IMG/VR virus record: IMGVR_UViG_3300009181_000033
Coordinates: 186,001 to 250,000 of that record
Reading direction: 5' to 3' (one strand)
DNA length: 64,000 bases
The translations under genes and the position numbers were made by a program. The notes beneath the pieces are model-generated. The model was not told the origin of the DNA. It did no database searches and saw only the letters and a program-made list of their open reading frames with translations. Of this stretch, positions 16,608-46,543 are shown piece by piece; position 1 is the stretch's first letter, and each line of letters starts with the position of its first letter.

Positions 16608-17406
16608 GATTTTTAATCTCCAAGTTTCTATTCGCTTTCCATTCTTTCAACGCGGCACTCATGTTTATTCCCAAACCTTCGAGTTCGACCAACGTTAATA
16701 ACACTGAGTTAATTTCAGAATATTCTTTTTTGAACTGTTCAAACTTATCGATTCTTTCCAAAGAACCGTTCGACCATTTCGATTTAATCTCTATTATCCT
16801 TTTCAAGGAATTATTTTCATATACAAAAAAGTCCGGTCTATAATATCGACCATCAGACAAGAGATAACTTCTGCACTCGACATCCCAAATTATATTCTTT
16901 TCATCTAGCCATTTTGCATATGCATATTCCCACGAACTTCTTAACCAAACATATTTAGAATGAGATTTATTGAAATGCCAGCCACAAAGATGATGTGTGT
17001 TGTTTTTGTCTCTATCAATTAATTTGCCAGTCCAATCCCTCCAGGGATTGGTTGGACCGCTGGCATTTTTTGATCTAATTTTTTTTAAATTTTCTGTCAC
17101 ACATGATCTTCCAGTCCTCTGGCTAATGTTAAGTGATTTAAAGATGGTACGTAATCGAGTGTAAGAAACGTTTCCTATCTCTTTTGACAACAACTTAAAT
17201 CCCATTCCACATTCACCATAAAGATAATTTAGATTTGAAATCAACTTGGGACAATCTGGATTGTCCTTGTCAATATAAAAGCTAGCTGTCATGTTTCCAT
17301 TTCTCGATTTAAATTTTCTTTTTTGTTTATCGCAAGCAATGATATGAATCAGCTGTCTTGTTTCTTCAATGAGTTCTTTATTTTCAATTACAATTTGATA
17401 CATCAC
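16600..17406 (-). CDS. Homing-endonuclease-like gene (PD-(D/E)xK) between halves of RNR split intein 2
   Basis: LRSSWEYAYAKWLD..YRPDFF..IEIKS; overlaps IntC gene by 8 nt. Confidence 0.8.
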   Translation of the reverse strand: MMYQIVIENKELIEETRQLIHIIACDKQKRKFKSRNGNMTASFYIDKDNPDCPKLISNLNYLYGECGMGFKLLSKEIGNVSYTRLRTIFKSLNISQRTGRSCVTENLKKIRSKNASGPTNPWRDWTGKLIDRDKNNTHHLCGWHFNKSHSKYVWLRSSWEYAYAKWLDEKNIIWDVECRSYLLSDGRYYRPDFFVYENNSLKRIIEIKSKWSNGSLERIDKFEQFKKEYSEINSVLLTLVELEGLGINMSAALKEWKANRNLEIKNHD

Positions 17407-17448
17407 TAACCCCTACCAATCATAAGTATGGAGCAGGGGTTAGTGATG
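17401..17448 (-). promoter_or_regulatory. RBS/start-occluding hairpin with ATACTTA motif in loop
   Basis: 14-bp perfect IR CATCACTAACCCCT/AGGGGTTAGTGATG; motif at 17423-17429. Confidence 0.8.
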
Positions 17449-17458
17449 ATCATTTATT

Positions 17459-18205
17459 TCATAACGAAAGAATTTTATCTTCCTTCGTGAGATTACCAGC
17501 TTCAACCCACCCGCGCTGAGTATAGACTCTATGATCTGGCGTTAGTTTAATTTTCTTTCCTGACTTTGTTGTTATCTGCAGAATCTTGGCATTGTCTTTG
17601 GTTTTGAAAGCAATTGCAGGTTTAATTACAATTTCATTGGTTTCAATGTCAAAGGCTTGAACATAGAAATTCGCCTTGTTGTCTGACAATTCTTTTACTG
17701 TTTTTGGTCCTGCATTTGTTCGAACAATTGTGTCACCTGTAACACATGGGTTTGTTGAAACATTTCCATAACCTTTATGCTCATAAACCTGGGTTGGAGT
17801 CATCTTCTTAACGGTATCCCAGAAGAGCAACCCCGGCTCGGCAGATGTCCATGCTGAATCAATAATTTGATTCCAGAGCTCACGAGCCTTGACAACCTTG
17901 GTGATCTTGGCTTCTGTAACAGGAACATCGACTGGCCATTGAAGAGTGAAGTCAGAATCATTCTTAACACAATTCATGAAATCATCGGAGAGGCGCACAG
18001 AAATGTTCGCTCCTGTGACTTTGGTAAGATCACGCTTAATATTGACGAATGTCTCCACTTCAGGATGACTACAATTGGAAGTGTAAAACCCATTTGCAAG
18101 AATTCGATGTGTGTCCTTGACCGTAAAGTCATATGTGGTTGATTTTCCGGCCGGAGAAATCCTCTTGATCTTTGATGTTGTCTTTTGAACGTTAGTGACT
18201 TCCAT
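17459..18205 (-). CDS. nrdJ: RNR piece 2: 44-aa IntC, 109-aa extein, 95-aa IntN
   Basis: YDFTVKDTHRILANGFYTSN|CSHPEV..GANISV..AEPGLLFWD..STNP|CVTGDTIV..LTPDH..KILSL. Confidence 0.93.
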   Translation of the reverse strand: MEVTNVQKTTSKIKRISPAGKSTTYDFTVKDTHRILANGFYTSNCSHPEVETFVNIKRDLTKVTGANISVRLSDDFMNCVKNDSDFTLQWPVDVPVTEAKITKVVKARELWNQIIDSAWTSAEPGLLFWDTVKKMTPTQVYEHKGYGNVSTNPCVTGDTIVRTNAGPKTVKELSDNKANFYVQAFDIETNEIVIKPAIAFKTKDNAKILQITTKSGKKIKLTPDHRVYTQRGWVEAGNLTKEDKILSL

Positions 18206-19151
18206 TTGTAATCTCCCTAATCTTTTCTACGCAAAATTCCCAGTTATTGTTTATGTCATGTTCCCAAAAGAAAAAATACTTATAACCATTTTCTTTTGCC
18301 AGTCTTTCCTTGATTTTGTCATCAAGTTGTTTCATGACTTGATGTTCCCTGAGCGGTTTCTTACCGTCTCCCCAGAAAGCTGGATTTCCATGCCAAAAAT
18401 CCCCATGGGCCTCTATCACTGTCTTTGAATCCCTCAAAAGAAAGTCATATTGTCTTTGTGCCAATATGAAGCTGTATTTGTAATTTACATTGATTTCTTT
18501 TAGAAAATTTTCTATTTTTTGTTCAATTGAAGTTTTTCGAAAGAGTTCTTTGTGAAATTGATTTCTGGTTGCATTTCGAATCTTTTCTATCGTTTCCAAG
18601 CTGTATATTCCAGTTTTATCCTTATTCCATGGGATATACTTTCTATCAAAAATATTATCGTTGTGTTTTTTTGTTAAGATTCTCTTATCTCTGATTTGTT
18701 CGTAATTTTCTGATTTACACCAGTGAGTCTTTTTGACTGAATCATTTCTTTGAGATAACTTAATTGCGTAACAAGTGTCGGAACAAGTTCCAATTTTTTG
18801 TTTTGATCTTTTGCATTTTGCATTGCAAATCGAACAAAGTCTCCAAGACTTTTCTTCTTTCTTTAAAAGCTTGGATGCTCTTTTGACTTGATGAAGCTCT
18901 TCTGGCGTATACTTCTCTACCGTTATCTTCCTTCTTGATATCTTGGCCGTCTCCCATACTGCCTTAAATTCATACTTGTTTTCAAAAAGTTCGTGAAGTC
19001 TTTGGTTGTTTATATTAAGGGCACGAACAAGCCCTGCCGGAGAACTCATCTTAAATTCATTAACAGTTTTTCCACGATAAAAGACTGTCTCCGGCAACTC
19101 AAAATAAAGAGTCGTGGTTGTTTCATTCAACAATCTCAGGATGATTGACAT
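18192..19151 (-). CDS. Homing-endonuclease-like gene (Vsr/DUF559-like, NUMOD3) between halves of RNR split intein 1
   Basis: PWNKDK..ETIEKIR, TSIE, YDFLL..IEAHGDFWH..WEHDI. Confidence 0.8.
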   Translation of the reverse strand: MSIILRLLNETTTTLYFELPETVFYRGKTVNEFKMSSPAGLVRALNINNQRLHELFENKYEFKAVWETAKISRRKITVEKYTPEELHQVKRASKLLKKEEKSWRLCSICNAKCKRSKQKIGTCSDTCYAIKLSQRNDSVKKTHWCKSENYEQIRDKRILTKKHNDNIFDRKYIPWNKDKTGIYSLETIEKIRNATRNQFHKELFRKTSIEQKIENFLKEINVNYKYSFILAQRQYDFLLRDSKTVIEAHGDFWHGNPAFWGDGKKPLREHQVMKQLDDKIKERLAKENGYKYFFFWEHDINNNWEFCVEKIREITNGSH

Positions 19152-19163
19152 GAAACATAAGTA

Positions 19164-20030
19164 TCACCGCTCTTTAAAACTGACATCATAAAAAACAAGT
19201 TCTTCTTTATCAACATCAATATCCTTGATTTGTTTAAGGTACTCTTCGCCTGTCTCGATGTTTTTTACAACAAATTTGTGTGTTGCCGTGACCTTGATGA
19301 TTTTGCCATTTTCAGCTTCAACCTCATAAATTTCACTGTCTTCAAATTTTTGATACGCTTCAATTTCCTTCCAGCCTTCATGGGTCCAAATTTTCCCATT
19401 AAATTTGTTGTCAACAACATCGTCAATTCTTTTCCAACCTTGGTCTGTTAGTACCAAGGTAGAACCTTCAAAGCATTCAATGGTGAGCATGAGTGCTCCT
19501 CGACGACCACCTTGGGCAACCTCACGGCAAGTATTTGAAAATCTTTCCATGAAGACACCAATGCCATCTGTTGTGCCGGCAGCATTTGCAGTGTGCATGC
19601 CCTTGGGACGAATTGTGGAAATGTCAAAACCGACACCTCCACGACGCTTCATGATCTGAGCCTGCTCCTGGTCTGTGAACAGGATTCCACCATAGGAATC
19701 TTGAGGAGAAGCAATTACGAAACAATTGGATAGAGATTGAAGCTTGTACTCGTTTCCAATTGCCGACATGGGGGAACCCTGAGGAACAACTTCCCATGAA
19801 GACAACATGTCATAAATCTCACCTTCAGTCAATGGATTAGGATACTTGGACTCGATTCTGGCGAACTCCTTTGCAAGACGACGGTGCATATCGCTTGGAG
19901 TCTTCTCAAGCAAGGAACCCTCGGCATTTCTGAGAGCGTACTTCGAAATGAAGACGGAAGCTGCCAATTCATCTCCATTGAAATACTTGAGTGATGCTTC
20001 GTATGCCTCTTCTTTTGTGTATGTGTTCAT
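19164..20030 (-). CDS. nrdJ: RNR piece 1: 185-aa extein plus 103-aa IntN
   Basis: PQGSPM, SLSNCFV, RRGGVG, VAQGGRRGALMLTIE|CFEGSTLV..VTATH. Confidence 0.93.
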   Translation of the reverse strand: MNTYTKEEAYEASLKYFNGDELAASVFISKYALRNAEGSLLEKTPSDMHRRLAKEFARIESKYPNPLTEGEIYDMLSSWEVVPQGSPMSAIGNEYKLQSLSNCFVIASPQDSYGGILFTDQEQAQIMKRRGGVGFDISTIRPKGMHTANAAGTTDGIGVFMERFSNTCREVAQGGRRGALMLTIECFEGSTLVLTDQGWKRIDDVVDNKFNGKIWTHEGWKEIEAYQKFEDSEIYEVEAENGKIIKVTATHKFVVKNIETGEEYLKQIKDIDVDKEELVFYDVSFKER

Positions 20031-20068
20031 ATCGATTCTTTCCTAAACGATGGGTCAAGGGTCAATAA

Positions 20069-21514
20069 CTATACGATGCTCGAGTGAGATTCACTCATTC
20101 CATTTAAAGAATTTTTCTTTGAAGAGAACTCCCCTTTGAGCTCCTTCCATTTTGCTCTCAGGGCCTGCTTTTGTGTTTCCTCATCAGAAGCCGTGACTGT
20201 CTCTGGGGCATCGGCTGTTCCAACAATTTCAAACATACTCTTGGCGGTATTCATCTTGATTGGATAAACCAAGCCGTCCCTTCCTGCTCGATTCTTTGCA
20301 ACATAAAGTCTCCCCCACCCAGAAGCCTTCTCATGAGGGCGTCTAGATACAGAGACAATAACATCACAAATCATAGCTTTGCCATAAGCTTCTGACATAT
20401 TTGTCATGTCGATTACTTCGCTATTGGCGCCTTCTTTGTTCGACTGTGATGCTGTCCAAATCGGTATTCCAATCTCCATCGCTAGCCCACGCAACTCTTC
20501 ATAAACAAGTTTAAGCTCATGTCTTAGAGAATCGAACTGCCGTGATGACCTCATGATGTCTGCATAATCAATAATAACAAGATCAGGTTTGAATCCTTTT
20601 AAGTCAAGTCTTTCTATGTGTGACTTGATGGTGTAAATGGAAGCTGTGTTTGTGGGATATTCCTTGATGTAAAGTCGACCAAGGTTCATGTCCTTATATT
20701 TGGCAACAACTTCATCTTTGCGATCCATAACCTCGTTCGAATCTATGTCGCAAAGATTGGAATCGTATCGAATACCGACGGCTGTTTCGGAAAGCTCAAA
20801 GGTGTAGTGAAGAACATTCTTACCTTCACGAAGAGCATTAGCACCAATCATAGTCAGCCAGTGAGACTTGCCGCTGCCGCTGGCACCAACGACACAGAGA
20901 AGTTCGCCCTTACCACTGCCTCCATTTAAGATTTCCTTCTTGTCCAGCTCGGCAAGTCTTGTGGGAATAGTGTCACGCTTTAGCTTGGTGAAGCGTGCAT
21001 CCATTTCATTGAAAAAGTCATGGCCGACGGATGGAGCTGTGCCGACTTGAACAGCCTTCTTGATTGTCTCTACGATAGATTCATACTTGTTTTCCTGCAT
21101 CTGGTCGACGGCAGACTCAAGAGCCTTCTTCAGAGCTTGCTTCCTGCAAAACTCTAGAGACTTGTCCTTGACGTACTGGAGATCGCCGGGATCGGGATTT
21201 GTCCTCATTCTCTGAAGGTAATCAACGATTTGATCACGCAAAATGAGATCGGTGCCGGCCTTGAGATCGTCTTTGATGATGGTAACAAGGAGCTGTAGAG
21301 TTGGGAATACCTTGTACTTCTTTGAATAGGAAAAATATCTGTCGGCCAAGAACTTGAGATAGTTGAGCTCAAAATATGAGACGTCAACAACTTCCATCAT
21401 CTGCTCGGCCCATTTATGATCGGTCAATAAAGCCTGTCCAAGCTTTTCTTGGAACGACTTACCAAATTGGCCGAATGAAACACCATTTGAATTTACGCGA
21501 TCATTTTCTGACAT
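20069..21514 (-). CDS. Replicative SF4 helicase (DnaB/gp41-like)
   Basis: GASGSGKS, IIDYAD, WTASQ, KNRAG. Confidence 0.9.
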   Translation of the reverse strand: MSENDRVNSNGVSFGQFGKSFQEKLGQALLTDHKWAEQMMEVVDVSYFELNYLKFLADRYFSYSKKYKVFPTLQLLVTIIKDDLKAGTDLILRDQIVDYLQRMRTNPDPGDLQYVKDKSLEFCRKQALKKALESAVDQMQENKYESIVETIKKAVQVGTAPSVGHDFFNEMDARFTKLKRDTIPTRLAELDKKEILNGGSGKGELLCVVGASGSGKSHWLTMIGANALREGKNVLHYTFELSETAVGIRYDSNLCDIDSNEVMDRKDEVVAKYKDMNLGRLYIKEYPTNTASIYTIKSHIERLDLKGFKPDLVIIDYADIMRSSRQFDSLRHELKLVYEELRGLAMEIGIPIWTASQSNKEGANSEVIDMTNMSEAYGKAMICDVIVSVSRRPHEKASGWGRLYVAKNRAGRDGLVYPIKMNTAKSMFEIVGTADAPETVTASDEETQKQALRAKWKELKGEFSSKKNSLNGMSESHSSIV

Positions 21515-22485
21515 TAGTTTTTCTCCGAAAGGAACTTAACACCCTCAACACACGACAAATCATAAAAGAAACCTTCAGTGTCGAAGTCATTAATTCCTTC
21601 CTTGACAAGATGCTTAATTAAACCCATTTTATCAACCTTTGGCACAAATGTACTAACTACATTTTCTACCTTCATTACTTGATCAGCCGAAAGCATGCTG
21701 CCATCCAAGTGCACCAGCTTCCAATTCCTCCTGATTTCATCCGCAGACTCAACAACCTTCTTGTAGGAGGAATTCTCCGAAGAATGACTGGCAGCATAAT
21801 CTATCAACTCTTGTAAAAGTATTTCCCTATCTCCTCCCAAAAATGGGAACTTAGTCGCAGTTGTCTTGAAGCCAAATCCTTTTATTCCTGGAATGTTGTC
21901 CGACACATCGCCACAGAGGCACTTTGCCAAAGCGAAATTGTGAGGTTTGACCCTAAATTCTTCGAATATGTCGTCGGGGACGATTAACTTCCTCTTATGC
22001 AGTGAATAAATCTTCGTGCTGTCATTCAACAACTGATACATGTCCTTATCAGAGGAAACGATGATCTTTTGCTGGTCGCCCAATGGTCCTCTGCAAAGAT
22101 ATGACACAACATCATCTCCTTCACAATCAGACACATAAATCTGACAGACAGGAATGGTTTTTAGCGCAGCCAGCAAACTGAAGAGCTGATATTGCTTATT
22201 CTCGTCCGTGTCAGGTATGTCGTCCTGATAGAAGCGATTGAGCTTCTCTGGCTTTTTATTCATCTTGTACTCAGGATATATTTTTCTGCGCCTTTGGGAA
22301 CCTCCACCTTCCCAGGCAACATACACCTTGGACGGCTGAAATTCCCGACACAGCCTCTGTAACGTCTTCATGAAGCCTACGCAACCTCCCATTTGATGAC
22401 CGTGGGACGACATTTGTGGATAGGCAGAGTATGACCTCACGAAAAGGTTGTAACCATCGATAATAAAAACGGGACGGTCGCTCAT
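21514..22485 (-). CDS. 5'-3' exonuclease / flap endonuclease
   Basis: IIDGYNLF, YPEYK, EGDDV, SSDKDMYQL, GDVSDNIPGIKGFG. Confidence 0.92.
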   Translation of the reverse strand: MSDRPVFIIDGYNLFVRSYSAYPQMSSHGHQMGGCVGFMKTLQRLCREFQPSKVYVAWEGGGSQRRRKIYPEYKMNKKPEKLNRFYQDDIPDTDENKQYQLFSLLAALKTIPVCQIYVSDCEGDDVVSYLCRGPLGDQQKIIVSSDKDMYQLLNDSTKIYSLHKRKLIVPDDIFEEFRVKPHNFALAKCLCGDVSDNIPGIKGFGFKTTATKFPFLGGDREILLQELIDYAASHSSENSSYKKVVESADEIRRNWKLVHLDGSMLSADQVMKVENVVSTFVPKVDKMGLIKHLVKEGINDFDTEGFFYDLSCVEGVKFLSEKN

Positions 22486-22520
22486 GGGTTCAAATTATTC
22501 CATGAGCGACCGTCAGTACA
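22473..22520 (-). promoter_or_regulatory. Start-occluding hairpin overlapping a sigma70-like promoter
   Basis: 15-bp perfect IR GACGGTCGCTCATGG/CCATGAGCGACCGTC (22473-22487/22500-22514); TGTACT-17-TAATTT-6-ATG. Confidence 0.75.
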
Positions 22521-22531
22521 ACAATCAATTT

Positions 22532-23533
22532 TTAAAGAATTTGAGATGCGATTAAGCAACCTCTGGCGACCGCATGGAGTGGATCCGACGCTTGACGCAC
22601 TATTTTCACAGGTAATGGAAAACCATTTTCTTTTAATTTCTTTTCAAAGTGAGTCACAAAACCTTTCGCCTTGGTCGTACCACCGGCAATAACAACCGGC
22701 AGGGGATCCTTAAATTTGGGTAGAGACTTATGGTCTTGCATTGCAGCAACCAATTGTTTAGCGGTATAGTCAATCAATCTATCATAATAGGTTGCGACAG
22801 CCGAAAGAACCTGGTTTTCATTCTGTTTTCCAACGGCAAAATCACCATTTTCTTTCTCAGCCTGAACAACCGAGTCGGTCTCGCCTGTGGCCACGGCAGA
22901 CATTCTATCAACCCAATCCCCGCTCTTTGTTGTTGAAAATTTTGTAATAGGTTCTCCGGCAAGCATCACACAAACATTAACCATACCGGCACCCCAAGAC
23001 AGAGCAACACCCGTGTATTCGTCATCAGAGAGCTCCGAGTAACAGAGGGCCTCGGCCTCATTAATTGATCTAGAATCGTAACCATTCTCTTCAAGGATCT
23101 TTTTTACAACATCCTCGTGATAACCGACATCAAAATCATCGTCTTCCTGATCAACAGGTTGTGCAGGAACACAAAACACAAGTTTTTCGCCTTTTTTCGC
23201 TGCCTTACCGGCAACTTCTTTCAAAATATATGAGAGGATTCTCCTAGCGTCTTTTTCCTTGGAAGAAACTACACCGCGATACATTGGCCTCTTTGCCGAA
23301 TCATTCCTTTCAACGGCTTTTTCAATTGCATCCTTTCCTAAGATGATGAAAGAACCGTCTGAATCCTTCACGTAATTTTTGCCTGCAAGACCTTTTTCTA
23401 TCATTTTTGTAGCGATAGGAGTAGATGGTTTGATGATGTAAAAAGCATCCCTGAAATCTTTATATTCAACGCCACCATCTGTCTCCGACGCTAAAACTAT
23501 AAAAGAAGTTCCAACATCCAATCCTTTAGACAT
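22532..23533 (-). CDS. Actin-fold ATPase (MreB/MamK/FtsA-like)
   Basis: GLDVGTS, INEAEA, SWGAGM, VIAGGTT, DPLHAVARG. Confidence 0.85.
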   Translation of the reverse strand: MSKGLDVGTSFIVLASETDGGVEYKDFRDAFYIIKPSTPIATKMIEKGLAGKNYVKDSDGSFIILGKDAIEKAVERNDSAKRPMYRGVVSSKEKDARRILSYILKEVAGKAAKKGEKLVFCVPAQPVDQEDDDFDVGYHEDVVKKILEENGYDSRSINEAEALCYSELSDDEYTGVALSWGAGMVNVCVMLAGEPITKFSTTKSGDWVDRMSAVATGETDSVVQAEKENGDFAVGKQNENQVLSAVATYYDRLIDYTAKQLVAAMQDHKSLPKFKDPLPVVIAGGTTKAKGFVTHFEKKLKENGFPLPVKIVRQASDPLHAVARGCLIASQIL

Positions 23534-23540
23534 AAAAAAA

Positions 23541-23852
23541 TTAACCCTTTCGATTTTTTAATCTTGATAACTTATCAGCAGCACTAAGTATGTCATCACT
23601 AGATTTCGTCACAGTTCCCAGCTTTTCACTCGGGGCATCGAAAGAATCAGTGGACACATTCGTTACAAATTTTCTATCGTCTATTTCTATTTTTGGTTTT
23701 TCTAATTTTTCTCTTCCCTTGGGTGGCGAAAATGAAATTAGGGGATTGTCGACTTGGGTATTTTCTTTTCGCAAATAAGATATGACTATATCAAATCTGC
23801 CCACAGCATAACCAAGCACAAAACCAGTAAAGAAACAAAACATTAATTCCAA
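23541..23852 (-). CDS. Small protein with N-terminal membrane anchor
   Basis: Hydrophobic N-terminus then charged tail; GAGGTG RBS before TTG. Confidence 0.6.
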   Translation of the reverse strand: MELMFCFFTGFVLGYAVGRFDIVISYLRKENTQVDNPLISFSPPKGREKLEKPKIEIDDRKFVTNVSTDSFDAPSEKLGTVTKSSDDILSAADKLSRLKNRKG

Positions 23853-23856
23853 AACT

Positions 23857-24312
23857 TCACCTCACTCCCGTGCTGCCAAACCCACCAATGCCCCTATCAG
23901 TGTCAGACAGCTTTTCACTTTTCAAGAAAGCCACCCTAATGACTTCGCTAAAAACAAGTTGAGCAATCCTGTCGCCTTTTTTTATAAAGAAGTCTTGGGC
24001 GCTTGTGTTGTAAAGAATGACCTTGATCTCACCAGTATAGTCGCTATCAATTGTTCCCGGGCTATTGAGAACAGTGATACCGTGCTTTGCCGCTAATCCA
24101 CTTCGAGGTCTTACCTGGCCCTCAAGCCCTTCCGGAATCTCAAGTCTGAGACCTGTTCCAATGAGACAACTGGCACCGGCAGGAACATTCGAATCTTCAC
24201 TGGCTCTCAGATCACATCCGGATGCCCCTTTTGTTGCGTAATGTGGAAGCAATGTATCGTCTTCAATAATATAACCAACAAATGCTAGCCTGGTGTCACT
24301 CATCTGTGTCAT
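23857..24312 (-). CDS. dut: Trimeric dUTPase
   Basis: ASGCDL, RPRSGLA, GTIDSDYTGE, GDRIAQL, RGIGGFGSTG. Confidence 0.95.
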   Translation of the reverse strand: MTQMSDTRLAFVGYIIEDDTLLPHYATKGASGCDLRASEDSNVPAGASCLIGTGLRLEIPEGLEGQVRPRSGLAAKHGITVLNSPGTIDSDYTGEIKVILYNTSAQDFFIKKGDRIAQLVFSEVIRVAFLKSEKLSDTDRGIGGFGSTGVR

Positions 24313-26203: not shown

Positions 26204-26226
26204 GGGGCGGGTTCTTCGCCCGCCCC
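26204..26226 (-). terminator. Hairpin/terminator after SSB gene
   Basis: GGGGCGGG/CCCGCCCC stem followed by TTCGTTTT on minus strand. Confidence 0.65.
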
Positions 26227-33081: not shown

Positions 33082-33083
33082 GT

Positions 33084-36517: not shown

Positions 36518-39500
36518 TCACCCTGAATAGCCTGAGAACCTAGAATTGTTTGAAGAATTTGCATGAATAAACATTGTTTGATTATCCTTTATGGGCATTT
36601 CCTTCTGTTCCAGAAGGAAATTGATTCTATCTCTTATGATCGACCGGTTGTCTTTTATGATCGCACTCTCCACCTTGCCAGTATCCATTGTAACATTAAG
36701 GTTGACAGTCAAGAGAACTTCTTTGCTGCGAACTGTGTAAATGCCACTGCTGCCCAATCCCATTTTACCGGCAAATTCCTCAAGCTTGGTCTTTATGTCA
36801 ACTGAAGTCCCCTTTGCGAGGGCTTCGTCAACCTTTTGGATAGCAGTGACAACTTCCTCGACAGTCTTTATCATGGCAACGGCTTGACCGGGGACTGATG
36901 TCTTAAATTGATCAAAGATCCTCTGCGCGCCGGACACCATGTTCTTAACACTGTCAAGAGTTCGTGGCATGTTATCAATTGCTTTTATGTTATCGAATAG
37001 ACTTACGGCTGGATCGATCCCCTTTTCAACGTCCTTCAGTAGATTTACCACGTCAGGAATAAATGTGCTCTTGACTTGGCTGGATTGGTAACCACCTATC
37101 ACTCCGGAAACATCCTTAAACTTCGTCATCAAAGTATTTATGCTTCTGTTGCCACTGGGTTCCGCCAAGGCCGTAAAGATGAAATTGAGATTTTCCATCG
37201 TTTGAGACAAGAACGCATTTCCTATGCCCATAGGACCATCCTCAAGGTCCTTGGTTGAATTGCTCATTGAGGAAAGAACAGGACCCATTTCTTTAAACAA
37301 ATCGCCCAATTTCTTTATGCCATCAATTGCAGACGTGTCTTTCCCGATGTACTCACCAATTTTCTTGACATAATCCACCAAGAATTTTAAGCTATATTTT
37401 TCTCCCCAAGACGCCCCGGCGAGAGCCGAGAATATTCCCATCACATGTCCGAATGTGTCTTCAAGGAAGGCGTTACTTTTGCCCTTTGAGCCCTTGTCTT
37501 CTATTGAATTTAGGCCACTAGTGATTCCAGAAAATGAAGATCCAATTCCGCTAAGCATCTCACCCAATTTTTTGCTCGTATCAACAAGGGCGGTTCCTTT
37601 CCCCATGTAATCACCGATCTTTTGGAGATAACCAGCCACGTATTTTATGCTATAATATCCATTCCAGGTGTCACCAGCCAGCGCAGACAATATTCCCATC
37701 ACATGTCCGAGTGTGTCTTCAAGGAAGGAGTTACTTTTGCCTTTGTTGCCTGGGTCAGGAATGTCACCAATTATTTTTGAGAGTTCACTTATTTTTCCAA
37801 ATGTTGAAAAAATACTGCTGACAGTTTCAAGTTTGTTCTTAAATTCTTGGCCAGAAGGTATTGTCTTTGTCACAGCCATCATCGAGCTGACCAGCTGAGG
37901 TATGGAATCTTTAACCTTGTCAAAAATATCAGAAATGCTTGGAAAGCTACTGACGACACTTACGATAGCGCCTTGGGCAGCATCAACTTTAATATTTCCT
38001 GCATCCTTAGTTGAAGAAGAAAGCGTGCCGGCTAAGCCAGTTATGGCCTTGATAATTTCTGCAAGAGGTGCCAGGCCTGAAATTTGCTCTGGTTTTAATC
38101 CAGACAAGGAGCTTGTGACAGAACCGATCAACTTTTTCGCAAATGGTAACAGCTTTTCCGTGACGGCACCGAGAACCTTTTCCATGTAAGTTGCAGCCGC
38201 AGTTATTCCAGCCGAATCCACCTCAGCTTGTTTGACACCACCACTCCAAAAGCCAGCACCTGAGACTTTTGTTTTTTGGAATTTTGAAACGTCAGGAGCC
38301 ATGCCCTGTATCAAACCAGTGAGGGCTTGAAAAATGGTCGATATGGCTTGAGCAGACTTTTCTATATTTTCAGCTCTACCAATCTTTGCCATTGCTTCTG
38401 CTATGGCGCGAATGAGAGGAATGACACCCTTCATCATGCTTTCTATATACACGGCTGCTCCGGAGAAACCAGCTCTTAAATTTTCTGATCTCTTGCCAGA
38501 GAGGCTATCAATCCAGCTGGTTGATTCGCCAGCCAATTTTCCAGTAACATCACCTATTTTGCCCATCAGGTCGCCAATTGACTTGATCACTTCAGCAAAA
38601 GCCTTGAGCGGTTCTATTTTATCTGGCGTGATAATTTTCACAGCCACTATGAGCTGTTTTATAACCTGATTTATTCCGCCATTTCCATTTTGGCCATCGA
38701 GAAGCGTCTTGATCATTTCTGTGACCGAGTCTATTTGTTTGGCCTTGTCGGCAGCACTGCCAAAGGCACTAAAGTCCATCGCTTTTATTATGTTAGCAAT
38801 TTTTTGCATTAAATCACCAACAGCATTGACAATCAAAACGAAAGTCTCGGCCTTTATTTTGAGGGCAGCCGGATCTTCCTTAATTTTGCTAAGCGATTCC
38901 ATGATGACCACAGCAGTTGCTGACAACGCCAACACACCAGCAGCCATGGCTGCCATTCCGGCGGCGGCGGCTCCAGCGGCAACACCCATTGAAGAGATTA
39001 TGGCAGCGCCGATCGCAGCGGCTTCCACCAGAATAACACCTACTTTCATGTAAACATTTGAAATAGCCTCCATCATGATTGCGGCTGCCTCGATCGATGC
39101 AGGATTAAAACCTTCAAATGACTTCAGGATGAGCCACGCAGTTCCAACAAGAATAGCAACAGTGGCGGCCATGGTGCCCATTCCAACCGCTACTTCTTTA
39201 AAAGCTTGTTTTATCAATTTTGAAATACCCAGAGCCATTAAGACAATGGTGGCGGCGGCACCATACATGGGGACCATAGCCAAGAACAAAAGTGTTGCCT
39301 TGCCAATGTCTTCTATGGAAACATCTTTGACGACTTTTAATGCAAGAGCAAATGCTCCGATGCCCTCGAGAAGAAGGAACGCCATTCCAGCAAAGACAGT
39401 TAGCAAAGATTGCCACGTGACACCCTGAAGGCCGCTCGCAGCTTTCAAAAAGACGCCCATTGGGATAAACATTCCTGCAACCGCGCCGAAGACAATGGCA

Positions 39501-41974: not shown

Positions 41975-42006
41975 GGCCTACATCCCTCCAATGCAAAAAC
42001 TTCAGA

Positions 42007-42309
42007 TCAAAGTGGCCAACGGACCCCAAGGGTCCTTTCAAATTCAGAAGCAGACATTTGCTTGATCCTCAATTTGTCTATGACCGACTGAACAGATGCA
42101 CCTGGTTTCTGTAGTTCATCTTGGAATCTTCTTGACGCCGAAAGCGCATTGGCAACGGCATTAATTTCACTCTCACTGCCTCTCAGCTTGGTATTAACCA
42201 ATTTTCCGGCCAGCCAAGCGCCCAATGACGCCAAGAAAATCTTTCCAGTCAAACTAAGGGAAAACATCCCTTCATTTAATGTGTCATTTTTGTCAGTCTC
42301 GGCGGCCAT
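42007..42309 (-). CDS. Hypothetical tail-region protein
   Basis: 100-aa ORF with AGGAG RBS. Confidence 0.6.
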   Translation of the reverse strand: MAAETDKNDTLNEGMFSLSLTGKIFLASLGAWLAGKLVNTKLRGSESEINAVANALSASRRFQDELQKPGASVQSVIDKLRIKQMSASEFERTLGVRWPL

Positions 42310-42372
42310 AAAATCTCCTAAAGTGCTAAAGCTCTACAGTAAATAATAGCATTAAGTCAAATTTGACATAAT

Positions 42373-42654
42373 TTATGTAAAACGACGAAGCCTTGAAGGC
42401 GTCTGTTCCCTTGCCATCCCCTGTAGCGCTCGAGTATCAGGAGAATTTTGATGCACGGCGCGAGACTGCGTGTTGCCGCTGTCGTGAGTTCTCTTTAATT
42501 CACGACTAATTCTGTCGATGAACCAGCGCTTGTACGCAACTGGCAGATTTTGAACCTCGCTATAGAGAAATCCACCATAGTAAGTGAGCAAAAACGCCGG
42601 TTCAAGGATCAGCTGTTCTCTATCTTCCGGCCGAAGGCCAAAGAAAGGTGACAC
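42373..42654 (-). CDS. Tail assembly chaperone extension, likely made by frameshift from upstream gene
   Basis: Overlaps upstream ORF by 35 nt in +1 frame; YYGGFLYSEVQNLPVAYKRWFI. Confidence 0.65.
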   Translation of the reverse strand: MSPFFGLRPEDREQLILEPAFLLTYYGGFLYSEVQNLPVAYKRWFIDRISRELKRTHDSGNTQSRAVHQNSPDTRALQGMAREQTPSRLRRFT

Positions 42655-43498
42655 CGAGGGGCATGCTCACCTCCTCACCGTGACCGCATGAATCACAAAC
42701 AGTGTGCTGCTTCATCTCAATTCCAGGCTCATTTTCTTTCACATAATTGCGAAGGGCCAATGAGTCACGGGCAGGCATCGCCTTAACGAATGCAGCAATC
42801 TTTGAGCGATCTTCAATGCCATCGATTGAAATAATTGAATAAAGCAAATTGGTTGTAACATTGGACTCGGCGCCCAACGCCAACTTCTTCTGCTTCTCAT
42901 TCAACATCATGATCTCTTCCTCGTCACGGCCGGTCATGAACTTAAACCTAACAACCTTCTTGCTGTAAGGGAGCAAGAACTCAAATAAATTAACACCAGG
43001 CTGAACAGGCTCAATCTCAAGTCGCTTTATGGGAAGAGAACCAAGATCGAATGAATGCGGTGACTTAATGTTGCACTCAGGGCACTCCATCTCAACCTGA
43101 TACTCAGGTCCATAACCCGTAATTCGAATGGCAGTCATCAAAGCATTTCTATCGCCGCTGAGGAGGTCAAGAGGATTAATTGACCTATCTATCAAACAAG
43201 ACTTAATCAGCTCAGTAACAACTGTCCCTTTCTTCAATAAGGCTCTGGAGGTTAAAATATCTTCCTCCTTGGCAGTCATCGCCTTAATCTCAACGACATC
43301 CATCTCGTAGAGAGACGACCCTTGAGGGTACACCCTCCCAGAAGAAGGAAGCGGCACAACCTCATGAGGTATATCTAATCCAAAATCAGCCTTTACCTTA
43401 TCTGATGCCGACTGTCTCGGCATTCTTGGATCAACGCCCTGTGACATTTGCTGCTGCTGAGAAAAAACTGCATTCTTCTGTTCACGATCTTCTGACAT
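42620..43498 (-). CDS. Tail/baseplate assembly chaperone (gp26-like)
   Basis: LPSSGRVY, MTAKEEDIL, GDRNAL..IR..GYG, CPEC, CDSCG..TFLWP. Confidence 0.7.
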   Translation of the reverse strand: MSEDREQKNAVFSQQQQMSQGVDPRMPRQSASDKVKADFGLDIPHEVVPLPSSGRVYPQGSSLYEMDVVEIKAMTAKEEDILTSRALLKKGTVVTELIKSCLIDRSINPLDLLSGDRNALMTAIRITGYGPEYQVEMECPECNIKSPHSFDLGSLPIKRLEIEPVQPGVNLFEFLLPYSKKVVRFKFMTGRDEEEIMMLNEKQKKLALGAESNVTTNLLYSIISIDGIEDRSKIAAFVKAMPARDSLALRNYVKENEPGIEMKQHTVCDSCGHGEEVSMPLGVTFLWPSAGR

Positions 43499-43614
43499 GT
43501 GCTAAGTCTCCTGATAACTTATCATATGGCCGCAGCGCAGAAAGTAAACAAATTCAACAAAAAAACATCTTATAATAGTTCACTTACATAATTAAAAAAG
43601 AAATAGGTGCTTAA

Positions 43615-44007
43615 ATGGCTATCAACTACCCTCTACAAGGCGAATTCAACACTTCAGCATATACAATCTCAGCTACTCCCTTTGTGACATCATCAACCAT
43701 CACACTGGGTGAAATAAAAGAAATCAATTTCGGCTACGTATCTAGATTTTTCTCCGTAAAAAACACCTCCCCAGGTACAGTCATATCGGTGGGATTCTCC
43801 ACCAACGGACTCAAACCAAAAAACTCAAACTTCTTCTTCCTCAGCGGCTCACAAGACTCAGGAGCGCTCGAACTCAGGGCAGACAAAATATTCATCTCAG
43901 GCTCAAGCGGAAACTCCATTTTTACCATAACCGCAGGACTAACAACAATAGCATCCAAGTTCGCCACACCCCTCACATCATCAATGGGCTTCACCGGAAT
44001 AGGTTAA
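43615..44007 (+). CDS. Ser/Thr-rich hypothetical protein
   Basis: 130-aa ORF, AGGTG RBS, ATAATTA at 43588-43594. Confidence 0.6.
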   Translation: MAINYPLQGEFNTSAYTISATPFVTSSTITLGEIKEINFGYVSRFFSVKNTSPGTVISVGFSTNGLKPKNSNFFFLSGSQDSGALELRADKIFISGSSGNSIFTITAGLTTIASKFATPLTSSMGFTGIG

Positions 44008-45668
44008 TCACAATTAATTTTCATGAGATAATTTCCACAACCCCAAATCTCAACAACTCCCGACTCTTTGGCAACTTCTTCTTGTGATAGATTACGAATC
44101 TTATCTGCTTTGTATTTAAATCTATTGTAGCGATGACCATAGTCAGTCCACCAAAATCTAGCACCCTTCGGTGACGACTCTAATCGCCAACCGGCAGTCA
44201 AATAGCTTTTGCCGTCGCCAACACGAGCGTCGACATAAGAAATGATGGACTGGAAACCCAAAGATTTTGCTTTCTTAAGCGAAACGGAAGTCAATCTTCC
44301 AATCCATCCACGAATTGTAATTCCTGGAAGACAAGCAGATCTTGCAACCTCTAGGGATAAAATTGCCTTCGAAGCATGAAATGGTTTTCGAAGTGACATG
44401 GCAGCGACAACCCTTCCAGATTCGTCAACGAGCCCAAAACAAGAAAAACACCTGACGTGCCCTTCAAGATGCGACATTTCAAAAAATGCTGCCGCCGTCA
44501 TATTGTCCAATTCCTTGATTTGTAATTTTCTTGCGTCAAGAACCTCGCCAGGCACACCAAGCCTGTGACGTAACATGCCCTCCACAATTTGTCGACGATT
44601 CTTCCATTCGTCTTCGAAAATCATAAAAAATTTGTGTCCGGCAGCCTCAACCGATTTTCGCTTTATTTCATGGTAGTTCCTGTCAGGGATGTTTGAAACC
44701 GAATGCCAATAGAGGCCATTGTATTCGATTGCAAGTTTTTTAGACGGCACGAGGATGTCCACCTCGCGAGGCGCAATTAGGCTTCTGTCAGAGAGAATTG
44801 CATCTGGTGTGATAGATGCAACGAAATTATAAACCTCGATCTGTCCCTTTGATTCTTTGGGCGCGCAAGAAAAACAGATAGGAGATTCCTCCAGCATGGC
44901 AAGACTCTTAAGTTGCTCGGCTCCACATTGCTTGCAAACGAACTTCAAACGATCTATGCGACGTCTCTTGTAATCTTCAATCGATGACAAAAGATGAAAT
45001 CCATCTGCGTGAAAAGCCAGCCTTGCTTCGAGATCTGCGGGCTTTATTCTTCGACCTGCACCTGATTTGTCATAACGTGCCTTTATTTTTTCGGCCGCAG
45101 ACGCAAGTGAAAGGTTTGTTTCTTTCGTGAGCCCTTTGTTCCATGGCACAAGTTCACCAGTTGCAAACATGCTCTTCTTAGTCATAGAAATCTTTTCGGC
45201 AGCTAGCTTCGCCTTTTCCGAATCAGATAAACGCCAATCGACAAAGGAACCTGAGAAATATCCCTTCCTCATCGTATCACCTGTCTTTAAAGACATGTCT
45301 GTGATTTTTTTTGATGTTTCTTTGGTAAGACCTTTGTTCCACACGGCATACGCACCCGACGCGTATGTTTCTGCGCGTTTTGCTGCCATTTCTTGTTGTT
45401 TATCTGGTTTCAGATAAACAGAATCGACTCTCGCATTGTGTCCTCTTGCGTATTTTGAAACGAAACCCCTTTTCCATCCTAACCATGGAATGTCGACATC
45501 ACATGTTGGAGAACACGCACATTTTGGCTGCTTGTCTTCGTTGAAGAGATGAACATAAAAGGACAACACATCCTCCACGTTATGACAATTCTTCAAGTGC
45601 TCAAGAAATCTAATTTCTTGCCCAAAGTCTTTCTCGCATTTCGGACACTTAATACGTTCGTAGGCCAT
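44004..45668 (-). CDS. Hef-like homing endonuclease paralog 1
   Basis: C2H2 finger, WNKGLTKET x2, AIEYNGLYWHS, IFEDEW, SYVDAR, RFWWTD, IWGCG; start moved to ATG 45668. Confidence 0.75.
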   Translation of the reverse strand: MAYERIKCPKCEKDFGQEIRFLEHLKNCHNVEDVLSFYVHLFNEDKQPKCACSPTCDVDIPWLGWKRGFVSKYARGHNARVDSVYLKPDKQQEMAAKRAETYASGAYAVWNKGLTKETSKKITDMSLKTGDTMRKGYFSGSFVDWRLSDSEKAKLAAEKISMTKKSMFATGELVPWNKGLTKETNLSLASAAEKIKARYDKSGAGRRIKPADLEARLAFHADGFHLLSSIEDYKRRRIDRLKFVCKQCGAEQLKSLAMLEESPICFSCAPKESKGQIEVYNFVASITPDAILSDRSLIAPREVDILVPSKKLAIEYNGLYWHSVSNIPDRNYHEIKRKSVEAAGHKFFMIFEDEWKNRRQIVEGMLRHRLGVPGEVLDARKLQIKELDNMTAAAFFEMSHLEGHVRCFSCFGLVDESGRVVAAMSLRKPFHASKAILSLEVARSACLPGITIRGWIGRLTSVSLKKAKSLGFQSIISYVDARVGDGKSYLTAGWRLESSPKGARFWWTDYGHRYNRFKYKADKIRNLSQEEVAKESGVVEIWGCGNYLMKINCD

Positions 45669-45694
45669 GGCACAAATATACCACAGCCTACGAA
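45657..45694 (-). promoter_or_regulatory. Start-occluding hairpin containing extended -10
   Basis: TTCGTAGGCTGTGGTA-TATTTG-TGCCATGGCCTACGAA: 16 pairs incl. 3 G-U; TGGTATATT 6 nt before ATG. Confidence 0.75.
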
Positions 45695-45717
45695 GTTGTA
45701 TAATCCAGTTGGCAGTG

Positions 45718-46515
45718 TCATTGTGTTGAAAAATGATGGGCATCGTGACATGCAACACACAATACGACACCAGAAACGTCTTGCTTCAAGTGGTAATCTG
45801 ACACCCACTCCGCTATCATCGACTTCCTCTCAAACGAATCACCAGGCTCACCCAGCTCGGCAATCGCGCGGTGCAAGATAGATGCGAATCTCTCCTCGTT
45901 GTGGTGCACCTCCAGGTCCCTCGTTCCTCCACACTTAGAACAACGAAATCCACTCGCTTTCAACTTCGGATACACCCAACTATTGTAAATATGTGATCTA
46001 ACGAGTGGTTGCAAAGCTGAAGTGCCATCCCTCCATTGAGAATGTGCCGAGCCAGTTAACGGCGTGATAATTCCAGTTTGCCATTGATCTCTCATTTTTT
46101 GAGATTTCCTAATCTTTTCGGACGTCGAATTGTAAGCGGCTTCTGAAATTTTTGCAAATACAGGATCATTCTCTTTTGATTTACCACGATTCCAAGGATT
46201 TCTGCTCCACAATCCTTCATCACGACGCTTCTTAAGGCTTTTTTCCTGTGCGCTCTTATTGTGCCCCCAATTATTGTGAACACGTGCTGCATGACCAAGA
46301 ACGTATTCCGAATATCCTTTCTGAAGAGTTACGAATTTCGTTGTCTCACCACAACCACAAGCACAAGTAGGTTCTTTTCCGTCTGGAAAGAATAGCATAC
46401 AATACAGGTCTTTGGTTGGTAGATTGTGTCGCTTTTGACAATGGATCCTCATCGAATCCAATTTAGAAGTTTCATACTCACCGCAAACCGGGCACTTAAA
46501 AGTCGAAGGGTCCAT
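45718..46515 (-). CDS. HNH homing endonuclease with Zn-finger N-terminus
   Basis: CPVC..HCQKRH, CACGCG, PWNRGK, CSKCG..LEVHH..LCVACH. Confidence 0.8.
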   Translation of the reverse strand: MDPSTFKCPVCGEYETSKLDSMRIHCQKRHNLPTKDLYCMLFFPDGKEPTCACGCGETTKFVTLQKGYSEYVLGHAARVHNNWGHNKSAQEKSLKKRRDEGLWSRNPWNRGKSKENDPVFAKISEAAYNSTSEKIRKSQKMRDQWQTGIITPLTGSAHSQWRDGTSALQPLVRSHIYNSWVYPKLKASGFRCSKCGGTRDLEVHHNEERFASILHRAIAELGEPGDSFERKSMIAEWVSDYHLKQDVSGVVLCVACHDAHHFSTQ

Positions 46516-46543
46516 GGTAGAAATATACCACGAACCCTTGACT
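46501..46543 (-). promoter_or_regulatory. Start-occluding hairpin containing extended -10
   Basis: AGTCAAGGGTTCGTGGTA-TATTTC-TACCATGGACCCTTCGACT; same geometry as 45657-45694. Confidence 0.75.

What the first reader, a model, noticed from the sequence alone, without database searches (positions are those of the whole stretch)
17401..46543. Promoter-in-a-hairpin switch on four nuclease genes
Seen: unrelated long stems bury the start codon, with a promoter motif in or at the loop: 17401-17448 (HEG, ATACTTA), 22473-22514 (5'-3' exonuclease, TAATTT), 45657-45694 and 46501-46543 (two HEGs). The last two share TATACAA-N12-TGGTATATTT-N5-ATG with different arms, and their G-U pairs work only on the mRNA strand. 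Known: T4 I-TevI is controlled by an RBS-occluding hairpin bypassed by a late promoter. Inference: read-through mRNA is silenced or terminated while the loop promoter gives mRNA lacking the 5' arm, leaderless in three cases. Use on a core replication nuclease is unusual.
Basis: partly seen in the sequence, partly recalled or inferred. Interest (0 to 1): 0.7.

Follow-up and report, generated by a model that had tools for sequence, protein, structure and literature searches.

The report
Start-hiding hairpins with built-in promoters
In an uncultivated 298-kb lake phage, three homing-endonuclease genes and a 5'-3' exonuclease gene have their start codons locked in strong RNA hairpins that also hold a promoter-like site, so probably only transcripts begun inside the hairpin are translated: a known T4-type trick, seen here in a new leaderless form.

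Summary
All four hairpins are real: -27 to -33 kcal/mol, z -6.4 to -8.4. Each has the ATG in its 3' arm. Freeing the start region costs 20-32 kcal/mol, against a median of 5 for 224 other genes of this phage.

The promoter part also holds, with corrections.
- Site 1 has an exact ATACTTA in the loop. It belongs to ATAnTTA, the most enriched upstream motif in the genome, which also precedes the tail genes.
- Sites 2-4 are not of that class. They share T(A/G)TAC-N17/18-TAnnnT-N6-ATG. The 5' arm is the promoter spacer, the -10 sits in the loop, and the predicted +1 is the A of ATG, giving a leaderless mRNA.

Orthologues of both HNH endonuclease genes keep the hairpin and promoter, with some compensatory changes. 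Exonuclease relatives keep the promoter but not the strong hairpin.

No transcription-start data exist, so the mechanism is inferred. The principle is known from T4 e, soc, 49 and I-TevI, from Aeh1 mobE, and from endonucleases in fractured genes. Site 1 sits in such a fractured reductase gene. The leaderless, spacer-encoded geometry and the non-T4 promoters make this a new variant of a known kind.

The parts
17396..17452 (-). Site 1 hairpin. The 5' arm starts 6 nt after the stop of the upstream reductase/intein-N gene. The 3' arm holds the AGGGG Shine-Dalgarno (17410-17414) and the ATG (17401-17403).
   Evidence: -33.4 kcal/mol, z -8.4; opening cost 32.3 kcal/mol
17423..17429 (-). ATACTTA in the loop of site 1. 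It is an exact member of the ATAnTTA promoter-like class. The predicted start lies about 6 nt downstream, at the first bases of the 3' arm.
   Evidence: ATACTTA is 17-fold enriched upstream of genes, and 14 of its 26 copies are intergenic
16600..17403 (-). Free-standing probable PD-(D/E)xK homing endonuclease (267 aa) between the intein-N and intein-C halves of a fractured ribonucleotide reductase.
   Evidence: RPD...EIK motif; context
22473..22514 (-). Site 2 hairpin: a perfect 15-bp stem with a 12-nt loop. The 3' arm covers CC plus codons 1-4 and the first base of codon 5 of the exonuclease. The 5' arm is the promoter spacer.
   Evidence: -29.4 kcal/mol, z -7.8; 19.9 kcal/mol
22516..22521 (-). 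-35-like TTGTAC, just outside the 5' arm of site 2.
   Evidence: TGTACT is kept at this distance upstream of the exonuclease gene in 6 distinct relatives, with TTGTAT in a seventh
22492..22497 (-). -10-like TAATTT in the loop of site 2, 6 nt before the ATG at 22485. No Shine-Dalgarno is present.
21514..22485 (-). 5'-3' exonuclease / flap endonuclease gene (323 aa), followed by DnaB-like helicase and reductase genes.
   Evidence: PF02739 5e-27, PF01367
45657..45694 (-). Site 3 hairpin: 17 pairs, 4 of them G-U, with the ATG (45666-45668) in the 3' arm.
45675..45702 (-). Promoter-like TATACA-N16-TGG-TATATT (extended -10) of site 3, with N6 to the ATG.
   Evidence: orthologues L098 and L099 keep TAAACA-N16-TGG-TATAGT
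44004..45668 (-). Homing endonuclease gene (554 aa).
   Evidence: phrog_3339 1e-57, phrog_559 2e-50
46500..46544 (-). Site 4 hairpin: 19 pairs with one bulge, 2 of them G-U, with the ATG (46513-46515) in the 3' arm.
46522..46549 (-). Promoter-like TATACA-N16-TGG-TATATT of site 4, with N6 to the ATG.
   Evidence: conserved in 8 orthologous loci
45718..46515 (-). HNH endonuclease gene (265 aa). Its N-terminal zinc-finger domain is paralogous to that of the 554-aa endonuclease.
46585..47109 (-). Tail tube gene upstream of site 4, a likely source of read-through transcripts. It is preceded by ATAGTTA and ATATTTA.
17459..18205 (-). Middle reductase fragment (intein-C + extein + intein-N) upstream of site 1, a likely source of read-through transcripts.

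Best explanation
Each of the four genes carries a self-contained expression cassette. The sequence that pairs with the translation start (the 5' arm) lies upstream of the gene's own transcription start.

RNA that reads through from the upstream, co-directional gene contains both arms. It folds into a 15-21-bp hairpin that buries the AUG, and at site 1 also the Shine-Dalgarno, so the gene is not translated.

RNA started at the internal promoter lacks the 5' arm and is translated.

At site 1 the promoter is an ATAnTTA element in the loop. This class has no -35 element and may be read by the phage's own sigma factor. Its transcript has a 14-nt leader with a free Shine-Dalgarno.

At sites 2-4 the promoter is T(A/G)TAC-N17/18-TAnnnT-N6. 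The 5' arm is the promoter spacer, the -10 is in the loop, and +1 is the A of AUG. The productive mRNA is therefore leaderless, and its 5' end is the 3' arm.

Shown: the hairpins, the occlusion, the motif classes and their enrichment, and conservation in orthologues.

Inferred: the positions of the transcription starts, that read-through occurs, the translational effect, and which polymerase form reads which motif.
For: 1. Hairpin strength and start occlusion are far beyond the genome background.

2. ATAnTTA behaves as a promoter-like signal.
- It is the most enriched upstream 7-mer family, and 42% of copies are intergenic against 15% of the genome.
- It is followed by an ATG-ORF at N4-7 in 13.9% of copies, against 1.2% background, with a peak at N5.
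- It has no -35 element.
- It precedes both tail sheath genes and the tail tube gene.
- ATAnTTA-N5-ATG is enriched in 4 related jumbo phages: 35 matches against 7 for the reversed pattern.
- The phage encodes a sigma factor with regions 2 and 3.

3. An exact ATACTTA lies in the loop of site 1. A fifth start-occluding hairpin outside the window, at G000:C1:161378, has ATATTTA inside it.

4. The class T[AG]TAC-N16-18-TAnnnT-N5-7-ATG has 7 members, against 0.39 on average for permuted 5-mers. They are sites 2, 3 and 4 plus GroEL, a glycosyltransferase and two others.

5. The exonuclease promoter (TGTACT-N17-TAnnnT-N6-ATG) is conserved in several relatives, with a peak of TAnnnT at N6.

6. Site 4 orthologues (8 loci, 60-78% amino-acid identity) keep 94% of the pairs. 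Two pairs changed on both sides and 6 changed on one side to a still-compatible pair. The non-coding arm is conserved better than the protein.

7. Site 3 orthologues show one C-G to U-A double change that includes a non-synonymous codon change.

8. Across 39 loci of the wider endonuclease family the median opening cost is 15.1 kcal/mol against 5.2 for controls (Mann-Whitney p 3e-13). The stems are unrelated in sequence. In about 11 lineages a U run follows the stem directly before the ATG, so the ORF could only be transcribed from inside the hairpin.

9. The G-U pairs favour the mRNA strand at sites 3 and 4.

10. The same logic is experimentally established for T4 e, soc, 49 and I-TevI and for Aeh1 mobE (PMC3014915), and was reported for endonucleases in fractured genes (PMC2677866).
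Against: - There are no transcription-start or expression data. No RNA run holds this phage, and metatranscriptomes of relatives cover only the tail tube gene.
- The loop motifs at sites 2-4 differ in the last base from ATAnTTA, and such variants are not enriched. Their promoter status rests on the smaller T(A/G)TAC class and on conservation.
- Covariation within close orthologues is modest: 22 of 500 shuffles reach the observed score.
- The strong hairpin at the exonuclease gene is absent from relatives. It could be recent and without function.
- Two other endonuclease genes in the window, starting at 19151 and 47207, have no such hairpin.
- The host is unknown, so it is also unknown whether it translates leaderless mRNA well.
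Confidence: 0.6

Rival explanations
1. The hairpins are constitutive translational attenuators. All transcripts start upstream of the 5' arm, the promoter-like motifs are coincidental, and the hairpin simply keeps nuclease levels low.
For: - Occlusion is certain.
- Homing endonucleases are usually kept at low levels (PMC3014915).
- The motifs at sites 2-4 are imperfect members of the main class.
Against: - An exact ATACTTA in the loop of site 1 has a chance of about 6e-4 given 26 copies in the genome.
- The -35/-10 geometry is conserved in orthologues and in exonuclease relatives.
- In distant homologues the hairpin is followed by a U run directly before the ATG. That would terminate any transcript containing both arms.
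Confidence: 0.15
2. The hairpins are mainly terminators or 3'-end stabilisers of the upstream genes (reductase fragment, actin-like gene, endonuclease, tail tube). Their overlap with the next start codon is incidental.
For: - Each hairpin lies 6-41 nt after a co-directional stop codon.
- Site 2 is followed by CCGUUUUUAUUAU.
- Distant homologues have true stem-plus-U-run terminators at this position.
Against: - The terminator scan finds none at the four sites, while it does find the canonical ones at 14486-14513 and 26204-26226.
- Sites 1, 3 and 4 lack a U tract.
- The 3' arms are coding sequence and the 5' arms are tailored to them, including a compensatory change tied to an amino-acid change.
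Confidence: 0.1
3. The features are DNA-level palindromes. They could be operator sites for a dimeric regulator, or an endonuclease autorepressor site as for I-TevI, or cruciform or recombination signals.
For: - Sites 1 and 2 are perfect Watson-Crick repeats that fold equally on both strands.
- They overlap promoter-like elements.
Against: - Sites 3 and 4 need G-U pairs and are 7-11 kcal/mol weaker on the other strand.
- 15-bp arms separated by 12-20 bp are atypical for operators.
- Arm sequences are unrelated between sites and between homologues, while the position relative to the ATG is constant.
Confidence: 0.05
4. The hairpins are RNA-processing sites or translational-coupling devices. RNase III cleavage in the stem, or a ribosome terminating upstream, opens the start site.
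For: - The site 1 stem begins 6 nt after the upstream stop, so a terminating ribosome would melt its base, where the AUG pairs.
- A separate 19-bp hairpin at G000:C1:173069 lies inside the upstream ORF with an ATGA overlap and no promoter motif. It looks like a coupling device.
Against: - At sites 2-4 the upstream stop is 17-41 nt from the stem.
- The Shine-Dalgarno of site 1 pairs deep in the stem, out of reach of a terminating ribosome.
- The site 2 stem (15 bp) is short for RNase III.
Confidence: 0.05

Closest known systems
T4 genes e, soc, 49 and I-TevI (also I-TevII and I-TevIII): an inhibitory helix at the translation start, bypassed by a late promoter
   Same: - The Shine-Dalgarno and/or AUG are sequestered in a helix on long transcripts.
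[quoted passage not shown]
- Site 1 matches this in detail.
- Gene 49 is a precedent for a nuclease that is not a homing endonuclease.
   Different: - The promoter here is not TATAAATA. It is ATAnTTA at site 1 and a -35/-10 type at sites 2-4.
- At sites 2-4 there is no leader or Shine-Dalgarno at all: the 5' arm is the promoter spacer and the 3' arm is the first codons.
- The phage is not T4-like in its transcription signals. It carries a sigma-70-family factor with regions 2 and 3.
- The temporal logic may be reversed at sites 3 and 4, where the upstream gene is a late tail gene.
Aeromonas phage Aeh1 mobE, a free-standing HNH endonuclease gene splitting nrdA
   Same: A free-standing endonuclease splits a ribonucleotide reductase gene. 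A hairpin sequesters its ribosome binding site and a phage-specific late promoter drives it (cited in PMC3014915 and PMC2677866).
   Different: - The reductase here is cut into three ORFs joined by two split inteins.
- The endonuclease type is different (PD-(D/E)xK-like), and so is the promoter motif.
Fractured genes with split inteins and free-standing endonucleases (Dassa et al. 2009, PMC2677866)
   Same: - The gene order is host gene + intein-N, then a free-standing endonuclease (including Vsr-like), then intein-C + host gene.
- RNA hairpins were reported upstream of 15 of 16 endonuclease ORFs, and 10 of them held a late promoter.
   Different: - Their promoter was TATAAATA; here it is ATACTTA.
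- Only one of the two endonucleases in this reductase has the hairpin.
- Sites 2-4 are not in fractured genes.
Leaderless mRNAs with a -10 element 5-7 nt before the ATG
   Same: TAnnnT-N6-ATG with no Shine-Dalgarno. This geometry is common across this genome, in the GTGCAAAG class and the ATAnTTA-N5-ATG class.
   Different: To my knowledge, occlusion of the same AUG on read-through RNA by an arm encoded in the promoter spacer has not been described. I did not search the literature exhaustively.

Membership tests
T4-type promoter-in-hairpin translational control | Shine-Dalgarno and/or AUG paired in a stable helix on long transcripts | tested here: met
   opening cost 20-32 kcal/mol against a control median of 5.2
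T4-type promoter-in-hairpin translational control | A promoter placed so that its transcript lacks the 5' strand of the helix | tested here: inconclusive
   Promoter-like motifs with the right geometry are present and conserved. No transcription-start data exist.
T4-type promoter-in-hairpin translational control | T4-type late promoter TATAAATA | tested here: not met
   The motifs are ATACTTA (site 1) and T(A/G)TAC-N17/18-TAnnnT (sites 2-4)
T4-type promoter-in-hairpin translational control | Read-through RNA is untranslated and promoter-proximal RNA is translated | not testable with these tools
   Needs reporters or toeprinting
Fractured gene with split intein and free-standing endonuclease | Host enzyme split into ORFs that end in intein-N and begin with intein-C | tested here: met
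   - Pfam reductase barrel and Intein_splicing pieces
- CFEGSTLV and CVTGDTIV intein starts...TSN|C and ...VHN|C intein ends
Fractured gene with split intein and free-standing endonuclease | A free-standing endonuclease ORF between the halves, with a hairpin before its start | tested here: met
   - 18192-19151 is Vsr-like and has no hairpin.
- 16600-17403 is PD-(D/E)xK-like and has the hairpin.
Intrinsic (Rho-independent) terminator | G+C-rich stem followed at once by a U tract | tested here: not met
   searches list none at the four sites. Site 2 has a U5 run 3 nt after the stem, which is marginal.
Leaderless-mRNA promoter | -10 element 5-7 nt upstream of the ATG and no Shine-Dalgarno | tested here: met
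   Sites 2-4 have TAATTT or TATATT, then N6, then ATG. The 5' end itself is not mapped.
Known RNA families (Rfam) | Match to a curated covariance model | tested here: not met
   the only hit in the window is one tRNA

The most novel reading that the evidence does not exclude
The cassette at sites 2-4 is a distinct, portable design, an "insulated leaderless gene".

- The freely variable promoter spacer is used to encode an anti-start arm. The same AUG is then translatable only as the 5' end of its own transcript and silent inside any longer RNA.
- Homing endonucleases carry this module with them when they invade operons.
- In this lineage the same design has arisen on a pre-existing conserved promoter of a core replication gene, the flap endonuclease.
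- At sites 3 and 4 it would shield the endonucleases from abundant late tail-gene transcripts, the reverse of the T4 temporal logic.
Probability: 0.35. Interest if true: 0.65.

Novelty: new variant of a known kind. Interest (0 to 1): 0.5.

Why it matters
- It extends the T4 and Aeh1 paradigm to an unrelated, uncultivated freshwater jumbo phage with different promoters. Mobile endonucleases there also seem to be kept translationally silent on host-gene transcripts and expressed only from their own promoter.
- The spacer-encoded arm shows a minimal way to make a leaderless gene blind to read-through. This could be useful as a genetic insulator.
- The analysis gives three candidate promoter classes for a phage with no culture. 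It also suggests that the host translates leaderless mRNA well, which narrows host guesses.
- Such hairpins can serve as an annotation cue for free-standing endonuclease cassettes and their start codons.

Tried and rejected
- Near-identical phage records: none.
- RNA-seq of this phage: none. Four lake metatranscriptomes of relatives, laid at 80% likeness, covered only the tail tube gene and gave no 5' ends.
- Rfam: no family at any site.
- Relatives of the site 1 endonuclease in IMG/VR: none.
- PDB sequence search for the site 1 endonuclease: nothing.
- The idea that sites 2-4 belong to the ATAnTTA class: rejected. Variants ending in T, G or C are at background, 1.4-2.1% against 1.2%.
- The idea that the exonuclease hairpin is conserved: rejected. 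Most relatives have an overlapping TGATG junction or a spacer with ordinary opening cost (median 5-6 kcal/mol). Only weaker versions appear in L023 and L010.
- A phage multisubunit RNA polymerase: not found.
- ATAnTTA in the loops of distant endonuclease homologues: 14 of 39 loci against 2% of control windows. This is suggestive, but those windows are A+T-rich. One such genome, G002, shows no enrichment of ATAnTTA-N5-ATG. I give this observation little weight.
- A first sliding-window fold of the whole genome timed out and was replaced by a seeded scan.


Full report
**Context**

The window is G000:C1:186001-250000 of a 297,894-bp IMG/VR virus record with direct terminal repeats. It has 43% G+C and comes from lake water. 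No near-identical phage record exists. Most genes lie on the minus strand.

The finding spans two regions:
- a replication module: actin-like gene, 5'-3' exonuclease, DnaB-like helicase and a ribonucleotide reductase;
- a tail module: two sheath genes, tube and baseplate.

Both were identified.

**The observation**

All four hairpins exist and are exceptional.
- RNAfold gives -33.4, -29.4, -27.8 and -27.2 kcal/mol, with z-scores from -8.4 to -6.4. None of 200 shuffles folded as well.
- In each, the ATG of the downstream gene is in the 3' arm. At site 1 the AGGGG Shine-Dalgarno is there too.
- I computed the free-energy cost of unpairing -13..+5 around each start. The four sites cost 32.3, 19.9, 22.6 and 20.7 kcal/mol. 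The 224 other ATG-started genes of this genome have a median of 5.2 and a 99th percentile of 17.9.
- A genome-wide scan for stems of 10 bp or more at -15 kcal/mol or below, with an ORF-opening ATG in or next to the 3' arm, put these four among the six strongest at credible gene starts.
- Sites 3 and 4 need 4 and 2 G-U pairs and are 7-11 kcal/mol weaker on the opposite strand. Sites 1 and 2 are strand-neutral.
- TGGTATATTT occurs only at sites 3 and 4 in the whole genome.

**The genes**

- 21514-22485 is a flap endonuclease / 5'-3' exonuclease.
- 44004-45668 is a homing endonuclease (phrog_3339, 1e-57).
- 45718-46515 shares its first ~127 residues with that endonuclease at 26% identity. It ends in an HNH motif flanked by two CxxC pairs.
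- 16600-17403 has weak PHROG hits to resolvase and endonuclease families and nuclease-type look-alikes in the Atlas. It also has an RPD...EIK motif. It lies between an ORF ending in an intein-N part and an ORF beginning with an intein-C part.

The reductase is cut into three ORFs by two split inteins, each with a free-standing endonuclease between the halves. This is the "fractured gene" arrangement of Dassa et al. 2009 (PMC2677866).

**Promoter-like signals of this phage**

Comparing 7-mers in the 60 nt upstream of genes with the whole genome singles out one family.
- ATACTTA is 17-fold enriched, followed by ATAGTTA, ATATTTA and ATAATTA. Together these are ATAnTTA.
- 42% of ATAnTTA copies are intergenic, against 15% of the genome.
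- 13.9% of copies are followed within 4-7 nt by an ATG that opens an ORF of 80 codons or more, against 1.2% at random positions. The spacing peaks sharply at N5.
- Every one-mismatch variant is near background.
- There is no -35 element.
- The motif precedes both sheath genes and the tube gene. At 11216-11222 it follows a canonical terminator and precedes a gene with a Shine-Dalgarno.
- ATAnTTA-N5-ATG is also enriched in four related jumbo phages, 35 matches against 7 for the reversed pattern. It is not enriched in an unrelated A+T-rich one.

The phage has a sigma-70-family gene with regions 2 and 3 and no multisubunit polymerase.

A second class, GTGCAAAG-N14/15-(G)GTAnnnT-N6-ATG, marks about 20 small genes between 60 and 110 kb of the genome.

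A third class, T(A/G)TAC-N16-18-TAnnnT-N5-7-ATG, has 7 members against 0.39 on average for permuted 5-mers. They are sites 2, 3 and 4 plus GroEL, a glycosyltransferase and two small ORFs.

Much of this genome therefore has -10-like elements spaced for leaderless transcripts.

**How the hairpins sit on the promoters**

- Site 1: an exact ATACTTA lies in the loop, 21 nt before the ATG. Using the N5 rule, the start would fall on the first bases of the 3' arm. That gives a 14-nt leader with a free Shine-Dalgarno.
- The same design recurs outside the window at G000:C1:161378. It has ATATTTA inside a -31 kcal/mol hairpin, with GAGG and the ATG in the 3' arm.
- Sites 2-4: the -35-like element (TTGTAC or TATACA) lies just outside the stem. 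The 5' arm is the 17-18-nt spacer. The -10 (TAATTT or TGG-TATATT) is at the top of the stem or in the loop. The ATG lies 6 nt further on, inside the 3' arm, with no Shine-Dalgarno.

A transcript from such a promoter would begin with AUG and contain only the 3' arm.

**Comparative evidence**

Site 4:
- Eight orthologous loci (60-78% protein identity) have the endonuclease at the same place after the tail tube gene.
- They keep TATACA, the TGG-TAnnnT and the helix. 94% of cells are paired, two pairs changed on both sides and six changed on one side through G-U.
- 22 of 500 column shuffles reach the observed score, so support from covariation alone is modest.
- One double change (A-U to G-C) accompanies a Leu/Pro difference at codon 3.

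Site 3:
- Two orthologues keep the structure. One C-G to U-A change includes an Ala/Thr change at codon 2.

The wider endonuclease family:
- In 39 loci the median opening cost is 15.1 kcal/mol against 5.2 for controls (p 3e-13, not corrected for relatedness). The stems are unrelated in sequence.
- In about 11 lineages a U run sits directly between the 3' arm and the ATG, and the Shine-Dalgarno lies in the 3' arm.
- Such a terminator would stop any RNA carrying both arms, so the ORF must be transcribed from within the hairpin.

The exonuclease:
- 80 related loci (59-73% identity) show no conserved strong hairpin. Many have a TGATG overlap with the upstream gene.
- Among 19 distinct loci with a spacer, TAnnnT peaks at N6 (5 loci, plus one at N5).
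- TGTACT lies about 17 nt upstream of the -10-like element in 6 of them, and TTGTAT in a seventh.

So the promoter is ancestral. The 15-bp arm complementary to codons 1-4 (MSDR, conserved) was added in this lineage within the spacer.

**Interpretation**

Read-through RNA is translationally silent, and at site 2 possibly also partly terminated. RNA from the embedded promoter is translated.

This is the mechanism established for T4 e, soc, 49 and I-TevI and for Aeh1 mobE (PMC3014915). It was also noted for 15 of 16 endonucleases in fractured genes, 10 of them with TATAAATA (PMC2677866).

Site 1 is a new member of that set with a different promoter word. Sites 2-4 are a variant I have not seen described: a leaderless gene whose promoter spacer encodes the anti-start arm.

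A speculative point concerns timing. At site 1 the late-type motif sits behind a reductase gene, as in T4 and Aeh1. At sites 3 and 4 a non-late-type promoter sits behind a tail gene that carries late-type motifs, so the logic may be reversed.

**Limits**

- No transcription starts, expression data or host are known.
- Promoter classes are inferred from enrichment and geometry.
- Two other endonuclease genes in the window lack hairpins.
- The exonuclease hairpin may be young.
- The rival readings are a constant attenuator, a terminator or stabiliser, a DNA palindrome, and processing or coupling. They are listed with their tests.

Noticed in passing
window 14862-20030 (-): A ribonucleotide reductase with a TSCPD domain at its C terminus is fractured into three ORFs (19164-20030, 17459-18205, 14862-16607) by two split inteins. 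Each split holds a different free-standing endonuclease: a Vsr-like one at 18192-19151 and a PD-(D/E)xK-like one at 16600-17403.
   Followed up: partly
G000:C1:161377-161431 (outside the window; L100:1855-1950 -): A fifth promoter-in-hairpin instance: -31 kcal/mol, z -8.4. ATATTTA lies inside it, and GAGG and the ATG of a 152-aa ORF of unknown function are in the 3' arm.
   Followed up: partly
G000:C1:173069 (outside the window; L101:1546-1640 -): A perfect 19-bp hairpin hides the ATG of a 133-aa ORF. Its 5' arm and loop lie inside the upstream pterin-4a-carbinolamine-dehydratase-like ORF, with an ATGA stop/start overlap and no promoter motif. It looks like an enforced translational-coupling device.
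   Followed up: partly
genome 38-110 kb (outside the window): About 20 copies of GTGCAAAG(TCAAC)-N14/15-(G)GTAnnnT-N6-ATG precede small genes. This is a third, very regular, leaderless-type promoter class, possibly early.
   Followed up: partly
window 22532-23533 (-): A phage actin-like protein matches Pfam Volactin, an archaeal actin family, at 8e-65. It is conserved at ~83% identity upstream of the exonuclease gene in several related phages.
   Followed up: partly
window 48939-52013 and 52058-55078 (-): Two tandem, unusually long (1024 and 1006 aa) tail sheath paralogues.
   Followed up: no
window 47207-48844 (+): A third endonuclease of the phrog_3339 family lies on the opposite strand, between the tail tube and sheath genes. 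Its start has no occluding hairpin. A palindromic TAGAATA-TAG-TTATTCTA lies in the divergent region.
   Followed up: partly
G000:C1:145726-147357 (outside the window): A phage-encoded GroEL homologue (phrog_5725, 2e-151) is preceded by TTGTAC-N17-TAAAAT-N6-ATG.
   Followed up: no
window 59149-59222 (-): A single tRNA-Gln (UUG) lies in a 371-bp gap whose predicted fold (whole-gap MFE -102.9 kcal/mol) has several further stem-loops that neither ARAGORN nor Rfam calls as tRNA.
   Followed up: no
L025 (IMGVR_UViG_3300031999_003971), about 45 nt before the exonuclease ATG: A three-segment arrangement: ATGTCTTA at the end of the actin-like gene, then TAAGACAT, then ATGTCTGA at the exonuclease start. 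The middle segment can pair with either neighbour, which resembles an attenuator.
   Followed up: no
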